From assembly GCA_964234715.1 (NCBI GenBank), contig OZ174284.1: DNA of 64,000 nt. One strand, 5' to 3'. Both the position numbers and the translations under genes were made by a program. Positions within the stretch are counted from its first letter, which is position 1; every line of letters begins with the position of its first letter. The notes below the pieces were generated by a model. It saw nothing but the letters and a program-made list of their open reading frames with translations, did no database searches and had not been told where the DNA came from. Source of the stretch: Podarcis melisellensis. Taxonomy: Eukaryota. This document shows, piece by piece, positions 2,855 through 40,000 of the stretch.

Positions 2855-3568
2855 CTTACCTGGTGGCAGTGAAGGCAGCAAAAAAAAAATATTTGGCTGC
2901 CTCCATTGCATCCTCATTGTGCCATCCAGCAGATATTTTCCAGATAGTGTGGGGCCTTTTACTGCCTGGCCCAAAAAGAGGTGAAAGCAGCTCACTGTGA
3001 CTTGCTCACAAAGCATTTTGAGGATAAAATTGCTTGCATCTTGCTCAGACCTTGACTCTGCTGTTACAACAGATAAATCTTGAGAGGTGTCCAGAGCATG
3101 TCTAGTCCTGTTATGTTGGATGAGTTTCAGTTAGTAACGGGTGAGGATGTGGAAAAGGTGCTTGGACCACTTACAGAAGCTAGACTGGTTACTGGGAGTG
3201 GCTGCTGAGACCATATAACACTGGTCCTGAAAGACATACATTGGTTCCCAGTAAGTTTCTTAGCACAATTCAAAGTGTTGGTGCTCACCTTTAAAGCCCT
3301 AAATGGCCTTGGCTCAGTATACCTGAAGGAGCATCTCCACCCCCATCGTTCAGCCCAGGCACTGAGGTCCAGCTTCAAGGGCCTTCTGGTGGTTCCCTCA
3401 CTGTGAGAAGTGAGGTTGCAGGGAACCAGGCAGAGGGCCTTCTTGGTAGTGGCACCTGCCCTGTGATGAACTCCCACCAGATGTTAAGGAAATAAACAAC
3501 TATCTGACTTTTAGAAGACATCTGAAGGATATTTTGTTGGAAGCTGCCCAGAGTGGCTAGGGAAACAA
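2855..3568 (+). mobile_element. Degenerate L2 LINE with internal deletions (RT domain missing)
   Basis: Translates to L2 ORF2-like pieces YLVAVKAAKKKYLAASIASSLCHPADIFQIV, HFEDKIACI and LDEFQLVTGEDVEKVLG. It then jumps to the post-RT ARLVTG..DHITLVLKDIHWFPV..FKVLVLTFKALNGLG, followed by an L2 3'UTR-like gctgcccagagtggct. Confidence 0.8.
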
Positions 3569-26867: not shown

Positions 26868-27823
26868 TAGAACTGGATATGGAACAACTGATTGGTTCAA
26901 AATTGGGAAAGGAGTACTGCAAGGCTGTATATTGTCTCCCTGCTTATTTAACTTATATGCAGAATTCATCATGCAAAAGGCTGGGCTGGATGAATCCCAA
27001 GCCGGAATTAAGATTGCCGGAAGAAACATCAACAACCTCAGATATGCAGATGACACAACCTTGATGGCAGAAAGTGAGGAGGAATTAAAGAACCTTTTAA
27101 TGAGGGTGAAAGAGGAGAGTGCAAAATATGGTCTGAAGCTCAACATCAAAAAAAAGATGATCATGGCCACTTGGCCCATCACCTCCTGGCAAATAGAAGG
27201 GGAAGAAATGGAGGCAGTGAAAGATTTTACTTTCTTGGGCTCCATAGTCACTGCAGATGGTGACAGCAGTCACGAAATTAAAAGACGCCTGCTTCTTGGG
27301 AGAAAGGTGATTACAAACCTAGATAGCATCTTAAAAAGCCGAGACATCACCTTGCCAACAAAGGTCCGTATAGTTAAAGCCATGGTTTTCCCAGTAGTGA
27401 TGTATGGAAGTGAGAGCTGGACCATAAAGAAGGCTGATCGCCGAAGAATTGATGCTTTTGAATTATGGTGCTGGAGGAGACTCTTGAGAGTCCCATGGAC
27501 TGCAAGAAGATCAAACACATACATTCTTAAGGAAATTAGCCCTGAATGCTCACTGGAAGGACAGATCGTGAAGCTGAGGCTCCAATACTTTGGCCACCTC
27601 ATGAGAAGAGAAGACTCCCTGGAAAAGACCCTGATGTTGGGAAAGATGGAGGGCACAATGAGAAGGGGACAACAGAGGATGAGATGGTTGGACAGTGTTC
27701 TCAAAGCTACAAACATGAGTCTGACCAAACTGCGGGAGGCAGTGGAAGACAGAAGTGCCTGGCGTGCTCTGGTCCATGGGGTCACGAAGAGTCGGACACG
27801 ACTAAACGACTAAACAACAACAA
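26868..27823 (+). mobile_element. BovB (RTE) LINE, 5'-truncated
   Basis: RT C-terminal half (GCILSP, NLRYADD, LRLQYFGH, HGVTKSRTRLND) and a (CAA)n tail. Closely parallels 36047-37006. Confidence 0.96.
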
Positions 27824-33646: not shown

Positions 33647-33780
33647 TACTGATCTGTGAAGAGTTGATCTTTTAACATCAGGAAGGTAGCCATACCATAC
33701 TATTTTGGATGTCTGCTAAAACCATTTTTATTTCAACAAGCCTACCAGATGCATTATTTAGCTATGTATATATGTTTCTA

Positions 33781-33908
33781 CCCCTTCATGGATCACTGCC
33801 TTGCTGTGGCGAAGGGGCTTGAAGAACTCAGAGAAGCTATGAACTATGCCGAGCAGGGCACCCAAGATGAACAGGTCATAGTGGAGAGTTTTGACCAAAC
33901 GTGATCCA
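33781..33908 (+). ncRNA. Candidate HDV-like ribozyme at the BovB 5' end
   Basis: Manual pairing: P1 33781-87/33811-17, P2 33789-96/33901-08, P3 33798-800/33808-10, 7-nt L3, P4 33823-29/33886-92, and J4/2 containing CAAA. Confidence 0.5.
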
Positions 33909-36900
33909 CCTGGAGGAGGAACCGGCAAGCCACTCCAGTATCCCTGCCAAGAAAACTCCATGGACAAAGACAACAGGCATATAAAAGTTATGACGCTGGA
34001 AGATGAGCCCCTCAGGTCGGAAGGCGTCCAACATGCTACTGGGGAAGAGCGGAGGGCAAGTACAAGTAGATCCAGAGCTGATGAAGCGGCTGGGCCAAAG
34101 CCGAAAGGATGCTCAGTTGCGGATATGCCTGGAAGCGAAAGGAAAGTCCAATGCTGTAAAGAAAAATATTGCATAGGAACCTGGAATGTAAGAACCATGA
34201 ACCTGGGTAAGTTGGAGGTGGTCAAAAATGAGATGGCAAGAATAAGTATTGACATCCTGGGCATCAGTGAACTAAAATGGACGGGAATGAGTGAATTCAG
34301 TTCGGATGACCATCATATCTACTACTGTGGGCAAGAAACCCGTAAAAGAAATGGAGTGGCCCTCATAGTCAACAAAAGAGTGGCGAAGGCTGTACTGGGA
34401 TGCAATCTCAAAAATGATAGAATGATCTCGATACGAATCCAAGGCAGACCTTTTAACATCACAGTAATCCAAGTTTATGCACCAACTACTGGTGCCGAAG
34501 AAACTGAAATTGACCAATTCTATGAAGACTTACAACACCTTATAGAAGTGACACCAAAGAAGGATGTTCTTCTCATCATAGGGGATTGGAATGCTAAAGT
34601 AGGGAGTCAAGAGATAAAAGGAACAACTGGCAAGTTTGGCCTTGGAGATCAAAACGAAGCAGGGCAAAGGCTAATAGAGTTCTGTCAAGAGAACAAGCTG
34701 GTCATCACAAACACGCTTTTCCAACAACACAAGAGACGACTCTACGCATGGACATCACCAGATGGGCAGCATCGAAATCAGATTGATTATATTCTCTGCA
34801 GCCAAAGATGGAGAAGCTCTATACAGTCAGCAAAAACAAGACCTGGAGCTGACTGTGGCTCAGATCATCAGCTTCTTATAGCAAAATTCAAGCTTAAACT
34901 GAAGAAAGTAGGAAAAACCACTGGGCCGGCAAGATACAATCTAAGTCAAATCCCTTATGAATACACAGTGGAAGTGAGGAACAGGTTTAAGGATTTAGAT
35001 TTGGTGGACAGAGTGCCTGAAGAACTATGGATGGAGGCTCGTAACATTATACAGGAGGCAGCAACGAAAACCATCCCAATGAAAAGGAAATGCAAGAAAG
35101 CAAAGTGGCTGTCCAATGAGGCCTTACAAATAGCGGGGGAGAGAAGGCAAGCAAAATGCGAGGGAGATGGTGAAAGATACAGGAAATTGAATGCAGATTT
35201 CCAAAGAATAGCAAGGAGAGACAAGAAGACCTTCTTAAACGAGCAATGCAAAGAAATAGAGGAAAGCAATAGAATGGGAAGAACCAGAGATCTGTTCAAG
35301 AAAATTGGAGATATGAAAGGAACATTTCATACAAAGATTTCCATAATAAAGGACAAAAGTGGAAAGGACCTAACAGAAGCAGAAAACATCAAGAAGAGGT
35401 GGCAAGAATACACAGAGGAATTATACCAGAAAGAAATGGATGTCCCGTATACCCCAGATAGTGTGGTTGCTGACCTTGAGGCAGACATCCTGGAGAGTGA
35501 AGTCAAATGGGCCTAGAAAGCACTGCAAATAACAAGGCCAGTGGAAGTGATGGTATTCCAGCTGAACTATTTAAAATTTTAAAAGATGATGCTGTTAAAG
35601 TGCTACACTCAATATGCCAGCAAGTTTGGAAAACTCAGCAGTGGCCAGAAGATTGGAGAAGATCAGTCTACATCCCAATCCCAAAGAAGGGCAGTGCCAA
35701 AGAATGCTCCAACCTACCGCACAATTGCACTCATTTCACATGCTAGCAAGGTTATGCTTAAAATTCTACAAGGAAGGCTCAAGCAATATGTGGACCGAGA
35801 ACTCCCAGAAGTGCAAGCTGGATTTAGAAGAGGCAGAGGAACCAGAGACCAAATTGCAAACATGCGCTGGATTATGGAGAAAGCTAGAGAGTTCCAGAAA
35901 GACATCTACTTCTGCTTCATTGACTATGCAAAAGCCTTTGACTGTGTCGACCACGGCAAACTATGGCAAGTTCTTAAAGAAATGGGAGTGCCAGATCACC
36001 TCATCTGTCTCCTGAGAAATCTCTATGTGGGACAAGAAGCTACAGTTAGAACTGGATATGGAACAACTGATTGGTTCAAAATTGGGAAAGGAGTACGACA
36101 AGGCTGTATTTTGTCTCCCTGCTTATTTAACTTATATGCAGAATTCATCATGCGAAAGGCTGGGCTGGATGAATCCCTAGCCGGAATTAAGATTGCCGGA
36201 AGAAATGTCAACAACCTCAGATATGCAGATGACACAACCTTGATGGCAGAAAGTGAGGAGGAATTAAAGAACCTTTTAATGAGGGTGAAAGAGGAGAGCG
36301 CAAAATATGGTCTGAAGCTCAACATCAAAAAAACGAAGATCATGGCCACTGGTCCCATCACCTCCTGGCAAATAGAAGGGGAAGAAATGGAGGTAGTGAG
36401 AGATTTTACTTTCTTGGGCTCAATGATCACTGCAGATGGTGACAGCAGCCACGAAATTAAAAGACGCCTGCTTCTTGGGAGAAGGGCAATGACAGGCCTA
36501 GACAGCATCTTGAGAAGTAGAGACATCACCTTGCCAACAAAGGTTCGTATAGTTAAAGCTATGGTTTTCCCAGTAGTGATGTATGGAAGTGAGAGCTGGA
36601 CCATAAAGAAGGCTGATCGCCGAAGAATTGATGCTTCTGAATTATGGTGCTGGAGGAGACTCTTGAGAGTCCCATGGACTGCAAGAAGATCAAACCTCTC
36701 CATACTGAAGGAAATCAACCCTGAGTGCTCACTGGAAGGACAGATTGTGAAGCTGAGGCTCCAGTACTTTGGCCACCTCATGAGAAGAGAAGACTCCCTG
36801 GAGAAGACCCTGATGTTGAGAAAGATGGAGGGCACAAGGAGAAGGGGGCGACAGAGGACGAGATGGTTGGATAGTGTTTTCGAGGCTACCAGCATGAGTT

Positions 36901-37006
36901 TGACGAAACTGCGGGAGGCAGTAGAGGACAGGAGTGCCTGGTGTGCTCTGGTCCATGGGGTCACGAAGAGTCGGACACGACTAAATGACTAAACAACAAC
37001 AACAAC
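33782..37006 (+). mobile_element. Full-length BovB (RTE) LINE
   Basis: About 3.2 kb with 5'UTR, AP endonuclease, RT and a (CAA)n tail. 12-bp TSD atatgtttctac at 33770-81 and 37007-18. Confidence 0.97.
33891..36992 (+). pseudogene. BovB ORF (APE endonuclease + reverse transcriptase) disrupted by two 1-bp frameshifts
   Basis: IGTWNVRTM, ILGISE, GDWNAKVG, NQIDYIL and GSDHQ (APE); QAGFR, FIDYAKAFD, QGCILSP and YADD (RT). The true sequence between ~35514 and ~35713 lies in ORF 35507-35746. Confidence 0.93.
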
Positions 37007-40000
37007 ATATGTTTCTACATTTTTACTGATTTTATGTGTGTGTGTTTATGTACACAACACACATTTTTATTAAGCACTTTATACACTTTATCTAAGTAAG
37101 ATAAATAAATGTTATCATGTACACTTGTCACCATGTCCCCATATAACAGGGGAGAGTACAATATTGAACTTCATGATGTTAAACGTATCTACCATTGTTG
37201 ATGAAGAGTTGAATGGTGATGGTTAAGGCAAAATCACATTATTTTCCTTCCTTTTCATTTTCAGTTAAGGCCTCCTTCAAATCCTTGAAATAATGTAAAT
37301 ATCAGAACTTGATTTAGCTAACCCTTGTATTAAACAGACAGTTATCTGAAATAAATAGAACATTTTGTCCCATGCTGATCTACTGACTTGACCACATAAA
37401 GGATTTCAAATTGTTTCCTCCTGATATTTCCAATGACATTTTTAATCCAAAGGCATCCAGCAAATGACCATCCCAAAATGAATATGAATGTGCCTTAATG
37501 ACTCTAATAGCTAATTAGGAATGGACAGTGGTTATTCAAACATTCTAATTAAATCACAGCTAAGCCTAATATATTGCTTTACGTATCATTATCTTTGTGC
37601 CACAGAAATGAACCAAATATGAATTATCTACTCATTAGAAGAAACATTGATCATGAGCTTTAGAATTCACCAAGGATTTTTATAGCACAATTCAAGTTTG
37701 TTGTTTTTTAAAGAAACAGATGTTCCAATTGCACAGATTTCCCATCAGAAAAATGGGAGGGAACCAAATGAGCACAAAACAAGCATTACTCCTTGCTTAT
37801 ACCCTGTATCCAGGCAGTGATGGTCTCTTCATAGGAGACAGTGGTTCTTATACAGTAACTAACAGGGCAATCAAAAGGCCCTTCCACCAATGTAAACCCC
37901 AACTCAGTAACACACTGGTCCATTGGGTCATCCTGAAAGTTGTCTATCCATTCTTGCTGCTTTATCAAACACTTGCTGCCAAAATTTGTACTTATTCCAG
38001 GAAATTGCTTCCAATAAAAATCCATTTGCAACCACATGAACCAGAAAAATCACAGTAGTTTTGCATTGTAATTTCCCCATGGCTTTCAAGGATCATGCCA
38101 CCACTGTGCACATGGTGAAATTTGGGGCGGCATTCCAGCATACAGTTCTTTCCTGCCATTTTCATTGGGGAACAAAAGTGCACGTGTGCATAAAGGGTGG
38201 AGAGATAGCCACATATCCAATGTCACCTGCTGTTATATCAGACCACTTTCTGCAAAAATTTAAATAGCAGTAACAACCTGTATATGAATACAGCATAAAA
38301 TCCATTTTTTTCTACCTGTGTTCTGTCTTTCTCTGTGGTGTTTGAGTTAGAGATATTGCTGGACTATAGCCCCCAACATCCCTGCCCATTGTTGACAGGC
38401 GCTGATGTATACATGCAGACTTGCTTTTGTTAATTAATGTGATCTAAAGGTATGTTCAACATTCAGAGTGATTTCACTACATTTTTCAAGTCATTCCAAC
38501 ATCAGCAATGTGTCATTCTCATCATTTGAAAATCTCATCAAGTATCAGCTACAGTCAATGCATCATCCCTTATCATTCACCACATTTTATCAGTCTATAC
38601 CTTACTCCACTAAAACACTTTCCAGGAGCCAGGAATGAAGGAAGAAAAGAGAAGTGAGACCATACTTCCTTACCCTCTATGGCTGGTGGAATAACAACGC
38701 ACAAGTAAGGGAACCTGAGAACCCTTGGGGGATCAGACACTAGTGCAAACATACTGATGTCATCATCAGGATGGGAACCAATTTGTTTTGTAATCATCTC
38801 AGAATAAGTCAAGTTACAGGCAACTCCCTGTTTGTGAGGGGGTTGCGTTCCAAGTTATTGTGCACATTGGTGGAGTTTGCATAAGCCTGCCCCACCCACC
38901 CTGTTCCACCCCCTTCCACTGCCATTCTGTCCTCAATCAAATGCATGCAAAATGGTTGCTTCTTGTATTGTTTAAAATCTTAGCTTGCTGAAGCCAATTA
39001 TGACCTGAAACAGGAGAGAGCTGCTCAATGATCACTACTGGTTTGCAGATCTGGTCACCAATGAAAAACAAGGAACATGTTGGTGTGTCTGTGACAGCAG
39101 GCAGCTGTGCTTGCTGCTTATGAAACACAGCAGCTCATGTGATAATATCAATAGTTAGTAAGAACAAGCTAGCTCATTTTGAGCAGTATTCATCAATTGG
39201 AAATCCAGCAGAGCATTATCTTTCCCATCAACTTCACTGATAAGTATGTGATACACACCTTCAGACTCCCTATGTTTTCATTTACAGAGCCGACAATCAT
39301 TCCGTATCCCAGTTGTTTGGAAATGCGTAGCGGTGGGATTCGAAGCTCATCTTCAAACTGATAAAAACTTGCAATTACTAATCTGCCATCTGCCTACATT
39401 GGCCAATCAGAAATCCCAGTTGTATCTGGGAAGCCAGGCCAACTGCACTTGCAGATCCAATAATGGCTTCCCTTGAGGTTCTCTTCTCACAGCTGCATAT
39501 TAGAGTCTCTGTATCAGTGACATCCTTGCTACAGTATCGACTAAACTCATGAGGTTTGCGGTTATCTCATGCTTGCAACTCAGACTATCAATCTTAACAC
39601 AACATACTCTCCCGTGGTTTCTCTGGCAGTGGAAAGGTTAGTTCTGGCAAAAGATATACAAAATGTTTGGGTCCAATTGTCTGCTTAACTGTCTCACTTG
39701 AGAATAAAAGCCTCAGCGGAGGCCTTCATGGGAAGCCTCTGTTCTACCTGTTGCAAGGAGGGAGGCCTCCAAAACTCATATTTTTGGAAGTCCAACCTGA
39801 TGGGTTTGAAAATGAGCAGATGTATACTGAGCTTTGCATGGGCTCTAGAGAACCATAACTTCCTTGTAATTCAAACCGAGATTGAGTACGAATCAATGTG
39901 TTGTTTGTGTGCACACACATTCAGCAAAAGCTTGCCTGCCTGCCTGTCTTCTCTTTAGGAGTGACCAGCTTGAAGGTGTAGCACCCAGAGCTGACCTCTT

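What the first reader, a model, noticed from the sequence alone, without database searches (positions are those of the whole stretch)
33781..33908. Candidate HDV-like self-cleaving ribozyme at the exact 5' boundary of a full-length BovB LINE
Seen: the first 128 nt pair in HDV order. P1 ccccttc (33781-87), P2 tggatcac (33789-96), P3 gcc, L3 ttgctgt, P3' ggc, P1' gaagggg (33811-17). A long P4 follows (agaactc/gagtttt enclosing gctatga/tcatagt), then J4/2 gaccaaac with a candidate catalytic C at 33895/33896, then P2' gtgatcca (33901-08). P3 (GCC/GGC) matches HDV, and P1 begins where the TSD ends. Known: HDV-like ribozymes process the 5' ends of R2 and some invertebrate RTE elements. Inference: BovB may release itself from host read-through transcripts without its own promoter, which could help explain its horizontal transfer across vertebrates. 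Caveats: no G at +1, only one possible P1.1 pair (G33803-C33818), and a mismatch at the P2/P3 junction, so this copy may be inactive.
Basis: partly seen in the sequence, partly recalled or inferred. Interest (0 to 1): 0.82.

Follow-up and report, generated by a model that had tools for sequence, protein, structure and literature searches.

The report
Candidate self-cutting RNA in lizard BovB
The first 128 bases of this lizard jumping gene (a BovB LINE) form a conserved RNA fold with the layout of the hepatitis-delta self-cutting ribozymes, exactly where the element begins, so it probably trims the element's RNA out of host transcripts; cutting is untested, and the cattle and rotifer versions of BovB do not fit the simple story.

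Summary
Every stated pairing is present at the stated coordinates, and P1 starts at the first base after an 11-nt target-site duplication of a 3,226-bp BovB (33781-37006).

The fold is not a one-copy accident. Full-length BovB from Zootoca, Pogona (two copies) and Varanus, and a bdelloid-rotifer BovB, carry the same domain. P1 is invariant. P2, P3 and P4 show compensatory changes: 8 pairs changed on both sides, against 3.0±1.4 in shuffles.

Four of five squamate copies with duplications begin at, or within three added bases of, P1 nucleotide 1.

Four results count against the claim:
- Rfam HDV models give no hit.
- Ruminant BovB lacks P1/P3/L3 and has a long extra 5' region.
- In two rotifer copies the motif lies 344 nt inside the element.
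- RNA-seq shows no pile-up of starts at 33781.

Verdict: the conserved RNA domain is real. That it folds as an HDV-type double pseudoknot is probable. About 50% that it is, or recently was, a self-cleaving ribozyme in squamate BovB. It is not a general BovB feature. If true, it is a new member of a known kind.

The parts
33770..33780 (+). 5' target-site duplication (atatgtttcta)
   Evidence: The identical 11-mer lies at 37007-37017.
33781..33787 (+). P1 5' strand (ccccttc). The proposed cleavage site is 5' of C33781.
   Evidence: Pairs with 33811-17. Invariant in 6 copies except one U.G in Varanus. It is the first element base by TSD.
33789..33796 (+). P2 5' strand (tggatcac)
   Evidence: Pairs with 33901-08. 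Two pairs covary: C-G to U-A, and A-U to G-C.
33798..33810 (+). P3 (gcc/ggc) with the 7-nt loop L3 (ttgctgt)
   Evidence: G-C becomes A-U in the rotifer copy, with G.U in one Pogona copy. L3 G33803 and G33806 are invariant. U33805 is a minority letter; 92% of genomic copies have C.
33811..33817 (+). P1 3' strand (gaagggg)
   Evidence: Invariant in all copies.
33818..33819 (+). J1/4 'cu'. C33818 pairs with G33803 (P1.1).
   Evidence: G23-C38 is invariant. The second pair is U.U in lizards and A-U in the rotifer copy.
33823..33892 (+). P4 domain: outer helix, internal loop, inner helix, tip hairpin
   Evidence: Five pairs change on both sides. The rotifer copy has an 18-nt hairpin insertion at the tip. 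The domain is retained in ruminant BovB.
33893..33900 (+). J4/2 (gaccaaac) with the candidate catalytic C33895
   Evidence: The column of 33895 is C in all 5 squamate copies and A in the rotifer copy. The next column (33896) is C/U/A. AAA at 33897-99 is invariant.
33901..33908 (+). P2 3' strand (gtgatcca)
33909..33959 (+). Conserved linker of the 5' UTR between the fold and the start codon
   Evidence: Conserved from lizards to rotifers and ruminants. This piece is found in ruminant Bov-A2-type SINE fragments (element positions 123-189).
33960..36992 (+). BovB ORF (AP endonuclease + reverse transcriptase), broken by two in-frame stops at 35514-16 and 35580-82
   Evidence: The protein is 95-97% identical to Podarcis muralis proteins carrying PF03372/PF14529.
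36993..37006 (+). 3' end with the (aac)n tail
37007..37017 (+). 3' target-site duplication

Best explanation
Bases 33781-33908 are the 5'-terminal RNA domain of a squamate-type BovB LINE. It folds as an HDV-type nested double pseudoknot: P1, P2, P3/L3, a one-pair P1.1, a long P4, and J4/2.

The most likely function is a self-cleaving ribozyme of the 'L1Tc flavour': C at +1, C-G pairs at the base of P1, and a minimal P1.1. It would cut read-through or host-driven transcripts immediately 5' of C33781. That creates the element's RNA 5' end and leaves a compact fold 52 nt upstream of the start codon at 33960.

What is shown: the pairings, their conservation and covariation, and the coincidence of P1 base 1 with the TSD-defined 5' end in four squamate genera.

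What is inferred: catalysis, the identity of the catalytic C (33895), and the biological role.

This particular copy is coding-dead (two in-frame stops). It carries a minority U at L3 position 33805, so it may be less active than other copies of its family.
For: 1. Five further full-length copies carry the domain, from Zootoca, Pogona (two), Varanus and a Rotaria-type rotifer. Sequence upstream of ccccttc is unrelated between squamate copies.

2. Structure count on 6 copies:
- 92% of cells are paired.
- 8 pairs change on both sides, against 3.0±1.4 in shuffles (1/500), and 1-3 when partners are slid.
- P2 has 2 such pairs, P3 has 1, and P4 has 5.
- P1 is invariant apart from one U.G.

3. The competing MFE helix has no double-sided change and breaks in the rotifer copy.

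4. TSDs end exactly at P1 base 1 in Podarcis, Zootoca and Varanus. One Pogona copy has 3 extra T; the other lacks 3 nt.

5. DNA contigs of two lizard runs break into unrelated flanks at 33781 (38 and 26 contigs), 33780 or 33783. They show no variant of 10% or more inside P1, P2 or P1'. In P3 only 33810 C>T is listed, at about 3.5% of DNA depth.

6. A published logo analysis says reptilian Bov-B full-length copies begin with a C stretch (PMC13295347).

7. Core similarities to HDV, from my own knowledge of the genomic HDV ribozyme:
- P3 is GCC/GGC.
- P1' occupies positions 31-37.
- The squamate majority L3 is U-U-G-U-C-G-U, against HDV U-C-C-U-C-G-C-U, including the conserved L3 G.
- J4/2 reads C-N-A-A-A.

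8. Precedent: L1Tc/ingi ribozymes cleave at C1, have three C-G pairs at the base of P1 and a single-pair P1.1, and reach about 95% co-transcriptional cleavage.

9. Lineage pattern: where the core and C115 are intact (squamates), elements start at P1. Where the core is deleted (ruminants) or C115 is A (rotifer), elements carry long 5' extensions.

10. RNA-seq: depth in one read orientation falls from about 78 to about 6 toward 33781. The other orientation stays flat and runs into flanks. This fits a sense-strand RNA 5' end there, if the library follows the usual dUTP convention.

11. An internally deleted derivative seen in RNA keeps the first 200 nt, as R2 SIDEs keep their ribozyme.
Against: - Rfam gives no match to any HDV-family model, even at E<=10 on 170 bases.
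- There is no G.U wobble at the cleavage site.
- P1.1 is one Watson-Crick pair plus U.U.
- A pyrimidine-pyrimidine mismatch sits at the P2/P3 junction.
- P1 offers no covariation because it is invariant, and P3 rests on one compensatory event.
- Only 6 copies from 5 lineages were available, so the statistics are thin.
- No alignment column has C in all six copies in J4/2.
- In two TSD-flanked rotifer copies the motif is 344 nt internal, so those RNAs were retrotransposed uncleaved.
- Ruminant BovB thrives without P1/P3 but keeps P2/P4, which shows that part of the domain has a non-ribozyme role.
- RNA-seq shows no pile-up of molecule starts at 33781. 48 and 74 reads run through the junction.
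- A 9-bp competitor helix is available in lizard copies.
Confidence: 0.5

Rival explanations
1. The domain is a conserved but non-catalytic 5' UTR structure. The P2/P4 hairpin, with or without the P1/P3 core, would serve translation initiation, binding of the element's protein, or protection of the RNA 5' end. The 5' end at C33781 would be set by transcription initiation from an internal promoter rather than by cleavage.
For: - P2/P4 are kept in ruminants without P1/P3.
- The whole fold is kept 344 nt inside rotifer copies.
- The start codon lies 52 nt downstream.
- There is no Rfam HDV hit.
- No column has an invariant C in J4/2.
- RNA-seq shows no sharp start pile-up at 33781.
- L1Tc's first 77 nt are both a promoter and a ribozyme, so 5'-terminal conservation can also be a DNA-level constraint (abstract of PMC3383444).
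Against: - The HDV-type nested double pseudoknot is known only as a ribozyme fold.
- P1+P3 complementarity at base 1 is very unlikely by chance, and P3 is compensated.
- Homology between the squamate and rotifer lineages begins exactly at P1 base 1. Cleavage explains that; a promoter does not.
- A capped Pol II start needs no terminal protective fold.
- An ORF-less internally deleted derivative keeps the domain, which argues against a purely translational role.
Confidence: 0.35
2. The domain is a relic. An ancestral RTE/BovB ribozyme is now inactive in all sampled lineages, and the fold is conserved only because these families are young or for secondary reasons.
For: - Non-canonical features are present: C1-G37, a weak P1.1, and a junction mismatch.
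- The rotifer copies were retrotransposed uncleaved.
- Many junction-spanning RNA reads are seen.
Against: - Compensatory changes separate lacertid, agamid and varanid copies and the rotifer copy. These copies are 83-94% (squamates) and about 71% (rotifer) identical to this one, which implies long-term selection on the pairings.
- The exact 5' ends at P1 in three squamate families need a continuing mechanism.
Confidence: 0.1
3. The pairing is chance complementarity in a GC-rich 5' end, with no structural meaning.
For: - Loose HDV-order arrangements occur at dozens of sites in the window.
- The MFE z-score is only -2.0.
- The z-scores of the first 39 nt are -0.4 to -1.6.
Against: - Covariation.
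- Shuffle tests at base 1.
- Conservation in a rotifer copy that is about 71% identical overall.
Confidence: 0.05

Closest known systems
L1TcRz and the L1Tc/ingi-clade HDV-like ribozymes of trypanosomatid LINEs and SIDERs
   Same: - They occupy the first ~77 nt of a dispersed, APE-type LINE flanked by TSDs.
- Cleavage is at C1.
- Consecutive C-G pairs lie at the base of P1, in the reverse orientation to HDV/R2.
- P1.1 has one pair.
- P1' lies at positions 31-37. I derived this from the primers printed in PMC3185411.
- A C-U-A-A stretch precedes the 3' strand of P2.
   Different: - The BovB domain is longer (128 nt, with a large branched P4).
- It has an 8-bp P2 with a mismatch at the P2/P3 junction.
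- Its sequence is otherwise unrelated.
- Activity is untested.
HDV-like ribozymes of R2, R4, Baggins and invertebrate RTE elements (Ruminski et al. 2011; Eickbush & Eickbush 2010, 2013)
   Same: - The same role is proposed: releasing a promoter-less non-LTR element from a co-transcript at its 5' junction.
- The RTE clade is already reported to hold predicted ribozymes.
- Non-autonomous deletion derivatives keep the 5' domain.
   Different: - Those ribozymes have G at +1 with a G.U wobble and a conserved P1.1/P3/L3 sequence.
- Curated models detect them. Here no Rfam HDV-family model matches.
Genomic HDV ribozyme and the mammalian CPEB3 ribozyme
   Same: - The same helix order.
- P3 is GCC/GGC.
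- L3 is 7-8 nt with the conserved G.
- J4/2 reads C-N-A-A.
- CPEB3 also has a P1.1 of one Watson-Crick pair plus U.U (from my own knowledge).
   Different: - C1-G37 replaces G1.U37.
- The P1.1 pair is G-C rather than C-G.
- J4/2 is longer.
- The biological setting is different.

Membership tests
HDV-like self-cleaving ribozymes | Nested double pseudoknot in the order P1-P2-P3-L3-P3'-P1'-(P1.1)-P4-J4/2-P2' | tested here: met
   The pairings were read. 92% of cells are paired across 6 copies, with covariation in P2, P3 and P4.
HDV-like self-cleaving ribozymes | P1 of 6-7 bp whose first base is the cleavage product's 5' end | tested here: inconclusive
   The 7-bp P1 starts at the TSD-defined first base in Podarcis, Zootoca and Varanus and at the family boundary in DNA contigs. 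In two rotifer copies the element starts 344 nt upstream. RNA 5' ends were not resolved.
HDV-like self-cleaving ribozymes | G at +1 forming a G.U wobble at the cleavage site | tested here: not met
   C1-G37 in all copies. This feature is not universal: active L1Tc/ingi ribozymes cleave at C1.
HDV-like self-cleaving ribozymes | 3-bp P3 closed by a 7-8 nt L3 with a conserved G | tested here: met
   GCC/GGC, compensated to ACC/GGU in the rotifer copy. L3 is 7 nt, with G at positions 3 and 6 invariant.
HDV-like self-cleaving ribozymes | P1.1 of two pairs between L3 and J1/4 | tested here: inconclusive
   G23-C38 is invariant. The second pair is U.U in the five squamate copies and A-U in the rotifer copy. 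One-pair P1.1 is reported for the active L1TcRz.
HDV-like self-cleaving ribozymes | Catalytic cytosine in J4/2 | tested here: inconclusive
   C33895 is invariant in 5 squamate copies. The rotifer copy has A there and C one base later, at the same distance (5 intervening nt) from its 7-bp P2.
HDV-like self-cleaving ribozymes | Site-specific, divalent-ion-dependent self-cleavage | not testable with these tools
   This needs an in vitro transcription and cleavage assay.
Rfam HDV-family models (HDV_ribozyme, CPEB3, drz-Agam and others) | A score at or near a family's gathering threshold | tested here: not met
   No HDV-family hit at E<=10, either on 5 kb or on 170 bases.
BovB (RTE clade) LINE | A single ORF with APE and RT domains, about 3.2 kb, a short-repeat 3' tail, 8-13 nt TSDs, and close protein relatives annotated in squamates and ruminants | tested here: met

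The most novel reading that the evidence does not exclude
An L1Tc-type HDV-like ribozyme made the ancestral 5' end of BovB. Squamate BovB still depends on it, being promoter-less and released from any host transcript. Lineages that acquired long new 5' regions (ruminants, bdelloid rotifers) did so through uncleaved read-through RNAs, together with loss (ruminants: core deleted) or weakening (rotifer: C115 to A) of the ribozyme. Ribozyme failure would then be the route by which a horizontally transferred LINE captures new 5' modules.
Probability: 0.3. Interest if true: 0.75.

Novelty: new member of a known kind. Interest (0 to 1): 0.62.

Why it matters
BovB is the textbook horizontally transferred vertebrate LINE, and how its RNA gets a defined 5' end is not described. 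None of the papers I could search links BovB to a ribozyme.

A 5'-terminal self-cleaving domain would explain three things:
- why squamate copies begin at one exact base;
- why the element can be expressed from any host transcript after arriving in a new genome;
- why SINE partners take BovB 5' UTR pieces from just downstream of the fold.

It would also add a vertebrate example of the non-canonical (C1) HDV-like class that motif searches miss.

It bears on RTE-based gene-writing systems that carry the native 5' UTR.

The contrast between squamates, ruminants and rotifers gives a natural experiment on gain and loss of the domain.

Tried and rejected
- **Rfam cmscan**, on 5 kb and again on 170 bases: only noise such as miRNA and pestivirus models.
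- **Protein-seeded scan of metagenome contigs:** 11 short loci, none reaching a 5' end.
- **L004** comes from a human-gut metagenome assembly. It carries BovB-like sequence, which humans lack, so I read it as dietary or other animal DNA. It is 5'-truncated and took no part in the analysis, although the blanket BLAST and model searches over all fetched loci included it.
- **Viral contig scans**, by pattern and by protein: nothing.
- **Pattern scan of bacterial and archaeal genomes:** two chance hits inside bacterial genes.
- **Anolis copy L018:** 5'-truncated, so uninformative.
- **Divergent RTEs** (Adineta L015/L016, L020, L025, Logan contig L021):
  - Their 5' UTRs are unrelated.
  - They give no hit to a covariance model built from the six copies.
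  - A weak HDV-order arrangement in Adineta was set aside as probable chance.
- **True 5' ends of the rotifer and ruminant elements:** no HDV-order motif found there.
- **Competing MFE helix:** tested and found unsupported by covariation.
- **Earlier findings of the scan:** nothing near this place.
- **Ruminski et al. 2011** could not be read. Whether that paper lists a BovB-type RTE remains unchecked.

Full report
**What is in the window.**
- The domain opens a 3,226-bp BovB LINE (33781-37006). The element ends in an (aac)n tail and is flanked by the 11-nt duplication atatgtttcta at 33770-80 and 37007-17.
- The ORF starts at the ATG at 33960, 52 nt after P2'. It encodes AP endonuclease plus reverse transcriptase and is broken by in-frame stops at 35514 and 35580.
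- Its protein is 95-97% identical to Podarcis muralis proteins, so the window is from a lacertid lizard.

**Is it more than chance in one sequence?** Only partly.
- The plain MFE fold keeps P2 but uses a competitor helix in place of P1/P3, with z = -2.0.
- A loose HDV-order descriptor hits dozens of places in the 64 kb.
- Rfam's HDV-family models give nothing, even at E<=10 on 170 bases.
- The same descriptor anchored at the element's first base is met in 1 of 20,000 dinucleotide shuffles (P2>=6) and in none with P2>=8. In the real window, 63 of 127,480 start positions meet it.
- So position matters. The real test is comparative.

**Comparative evidence.** I fetched genomic loci through BovB proteins.
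- Full-length copies from Zootoca (L012:9821), Pogona (L013:11454 and L013:21429 minus strand) and Varanus (L019:9822) all carry the domain. So does a divergent element, about 71% identical, in an ENA contig (L014:9244).
- Between squamate copies the sequence upstream of ccccttc is unrelated.
- The ENA element belongs to a bdelloid rotifer. Its 90% protein cluster holds Rotaria sp. Silwood2 proteins.
- On the six-copy alignment, the HDV structure pairs 92% of cells. It has 8 pairs changed on both sides, against 3.0±1.4 in shuffles (1/500) and 1-3 in slid controls.
- P2 covaries at two pairs: C-G to U-A in Pogona, and A-U to G-C in Pogona and the rotifer.
- P3 changes G-C to A-U in the rotifer, with G.U in one Pogona copy.
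- P4 covaries at five pairs and holds an 18-nt hairpin insertion in the rotifer.
- P1 is invariant, with one U.G in Varanus.
- The competing MFE helix has no double-sided change and collapses in the rotifer.
- A covariance model of the nested part finds only these copies and, in part, the ruminant ones.

**The 5' end.**
- TSDs end exactly at P1 base 1 in Podarcis, Zootoca and Varanus. One Pogona copy has three extra T, and the other lacks three bases.
- Logan DNA contigs of two lizard runs break into unrelated flanks at 33781, with fewer at 33780 and 33783. They show no variant of 10% or more inside P1, P2 or P1'. In P3 only 33810 C>T is listed, at about 3.5% of DNA depth.
- The window copy differs from the family majority at 33805 (L3; C in 92%) and at 33824.
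- A 2026 paper notes independently that reptilian Bov-B full-length copies begin with a C stretch. It does not mention a UTR structure, a promoter or a ribozyme.

- C at +1, C-G pairs at the base of P1 and a one-pair P1.1 are reported for the L1Tc/ingi-clade HDV-like ribozymes. Those ribozymes cleave at C1 and reach about 95% co-transcriptional cleavage.
- Primers printed in that paper place L1Tc's P1' at positions 31-37, as here, and show a C-U-A-A stretch before the 3' strand of P2.
- From my own knowledge of the genomic HDV ribozyme, three features also match: P3 GCC/GGC, the L3 pattern U..UCG.U with its conserved G, and J4/2 C-N-A-A.
- These are resemblances, not proof.

**Evidence that cuts the other way.**
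- Ruminant BovB (Muntiacus L017, Bos L024) lacks P1/P3/L3/P1'. About 22 nt are replaced by about 10. It has at least 200-250 nt of extra shared 5' sequence. It keeps a P2-like helix (ggaccaca/tgtggtcc) closing the P4 domain.
- A second rotifer copy (L026) is 99.9% identical to L014, and both share 344 nt upstream of ccccttc. Different TSDs (gttgggggtg and ctacagaaa) flank starts at L014:8900 and L026:9460. There the motif is internal and was not cleaved off in the RNAs that were copied.
- The rotifer copy also has A where all squamates have the candidate catalytic C. It has C one base later, at the same distance from its 7-bp P2.
- No HDV-order motif sits at the true 5' ends of the rotifer or ruminant elements.

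**RNA-seq** (two 2026 raw-read runs, one call allowed).
- There is no pile-up of molecule starts at 33781.
- 48 and 74 reads run through the junction, mostly into one flank, which indicates one dominant expressed locus.
- The two read orientations behave differently. 'First mate on +' depth is flat to the edge and accounts for essentially all of the loose ends. 'First mate on -' depth falls from about 78 to about 6 over the first 150 nt, while DNA depth is roughly flat.
- If the library follows the usual convention (first mate opposite to the RNA), sense-strand BovB RNA mostly ends at or near the element start, and antisense RNA reads through.
- This is suggestive only. Strandedness is unverified, a few loci dominate the signal, and a start at C1 could equally be a transcription start.
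- RNA reads also join 33980 to the element's 3' end. This is an internally deleted, ORF-less derivative that keeps the first 200 nt.

**Synthesis.**
- The conserved RNA domain is real. P2 and P4 are secure. P1 and P3, and therefore the HDV topology, are probable.
- A self-cleaving ribozyme of the L1Tc type is the most economical explanation for a double pseudoknot sitting exactly at the 5' end of squamate copies.
- The lineage pattern fits that model: an intact core goes with a start at P1, and a damaged core goes with a long 5' extension.
- The rotifer and ruminant data also fit a non-catalytic 5' UTR structure.
- I put the ribozyme reading at about 0.5, a non-catalytic structure at about 0.35, a relic at about 0.1 and chance at about 0.05.
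- The claim should be restricted to squamate-type BovB. The link to horizontal transfer remains speculation.
- The searchable literature reports predicted ribozymes in RTE families but nothing for BovB. Ruminski et al. 2011 could not be read.

Noticed in passing
window 26868-27823: A second BovB copy, 5'-truncated. It is 93.5% identical to the last 956 bp of the full-length element.
   Followed up: partly
L014:8900-12482 and L026:9460-13043: A BovB-type element in a bdelloid rotifer (its protein cluster holds Rotaria sp. Silwood2). It is about 71% identical in DNA and 64% in protein to the lizard element. Two copies are 99.9% identical with intact TSDs, and one encodes an uninterrupted 1,011-aa ORF, so it looks recently active. 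It has a private 344-nt 5' extension.
   Followed up: partly
L017:11865-12110 and L024:8890-9210 (minus strand): Ruminant BovB shares a 5' region of at least 200-250 nt that is absent from squamate and rotifer copies. The Bov-A2-type SINE fragments scattered through L017 match only element positions ~123-189 plus ~3146-3210, that is, from just after the structured domain.
   Followed up: partly
window 33970-34109: In both RNA-seq runs a 140-nt BovB fragment is much more deeply covered in one orientation. It has its own variant set, loose ends before 33970 (an ag precedes it) and molecule ends at 34109. This looks like an exonised or UTR-embedded BovB fragment of some expressed gene elsewhere in the genome.
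   Followed up: no
window 33980 joined to ~36925 (RNA reads only): 30-36 RNA reads per run continue from 33980 into the element's 3' terminal sequence. This indicates an expressed, internally deleted non-autonomous BovB derivative that keeps the 5' 200 nt and the 3' end.
   Followed up: no
proteins P0012 and P0006: A 'hypothetical protein' of the bacterium Sinisalibacter lacisalsi, on a 2.3-kb contig, is 77% identical to this BovB ORF. It is probably animal DNA contamination of that assembly. A Podarcis raffonei 'elongation factor 1-beta isoform X1' model carries BovB endonuclease domains and is probably a gene-model fusion.
   Followed up: no
window 33909-33959: The 51 nt between the fold and the start codon are conserved from lizards to rotifers and ruminants at the DNA level. 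In frame they read ..GKPLQYPCQEN.., which resembles the well-known peptide-like motif at the BovB/Bov-A2 3' end. The reason for this conservation is unexplained.
   Followed up: no
window 37037-37070: A (tg)n/(ca)n microsatellite lies just 3' of the insertion. It is the source of the spurious Rfam hits (mir-672, pestivirus 3' UTR).
   Followed up: yes
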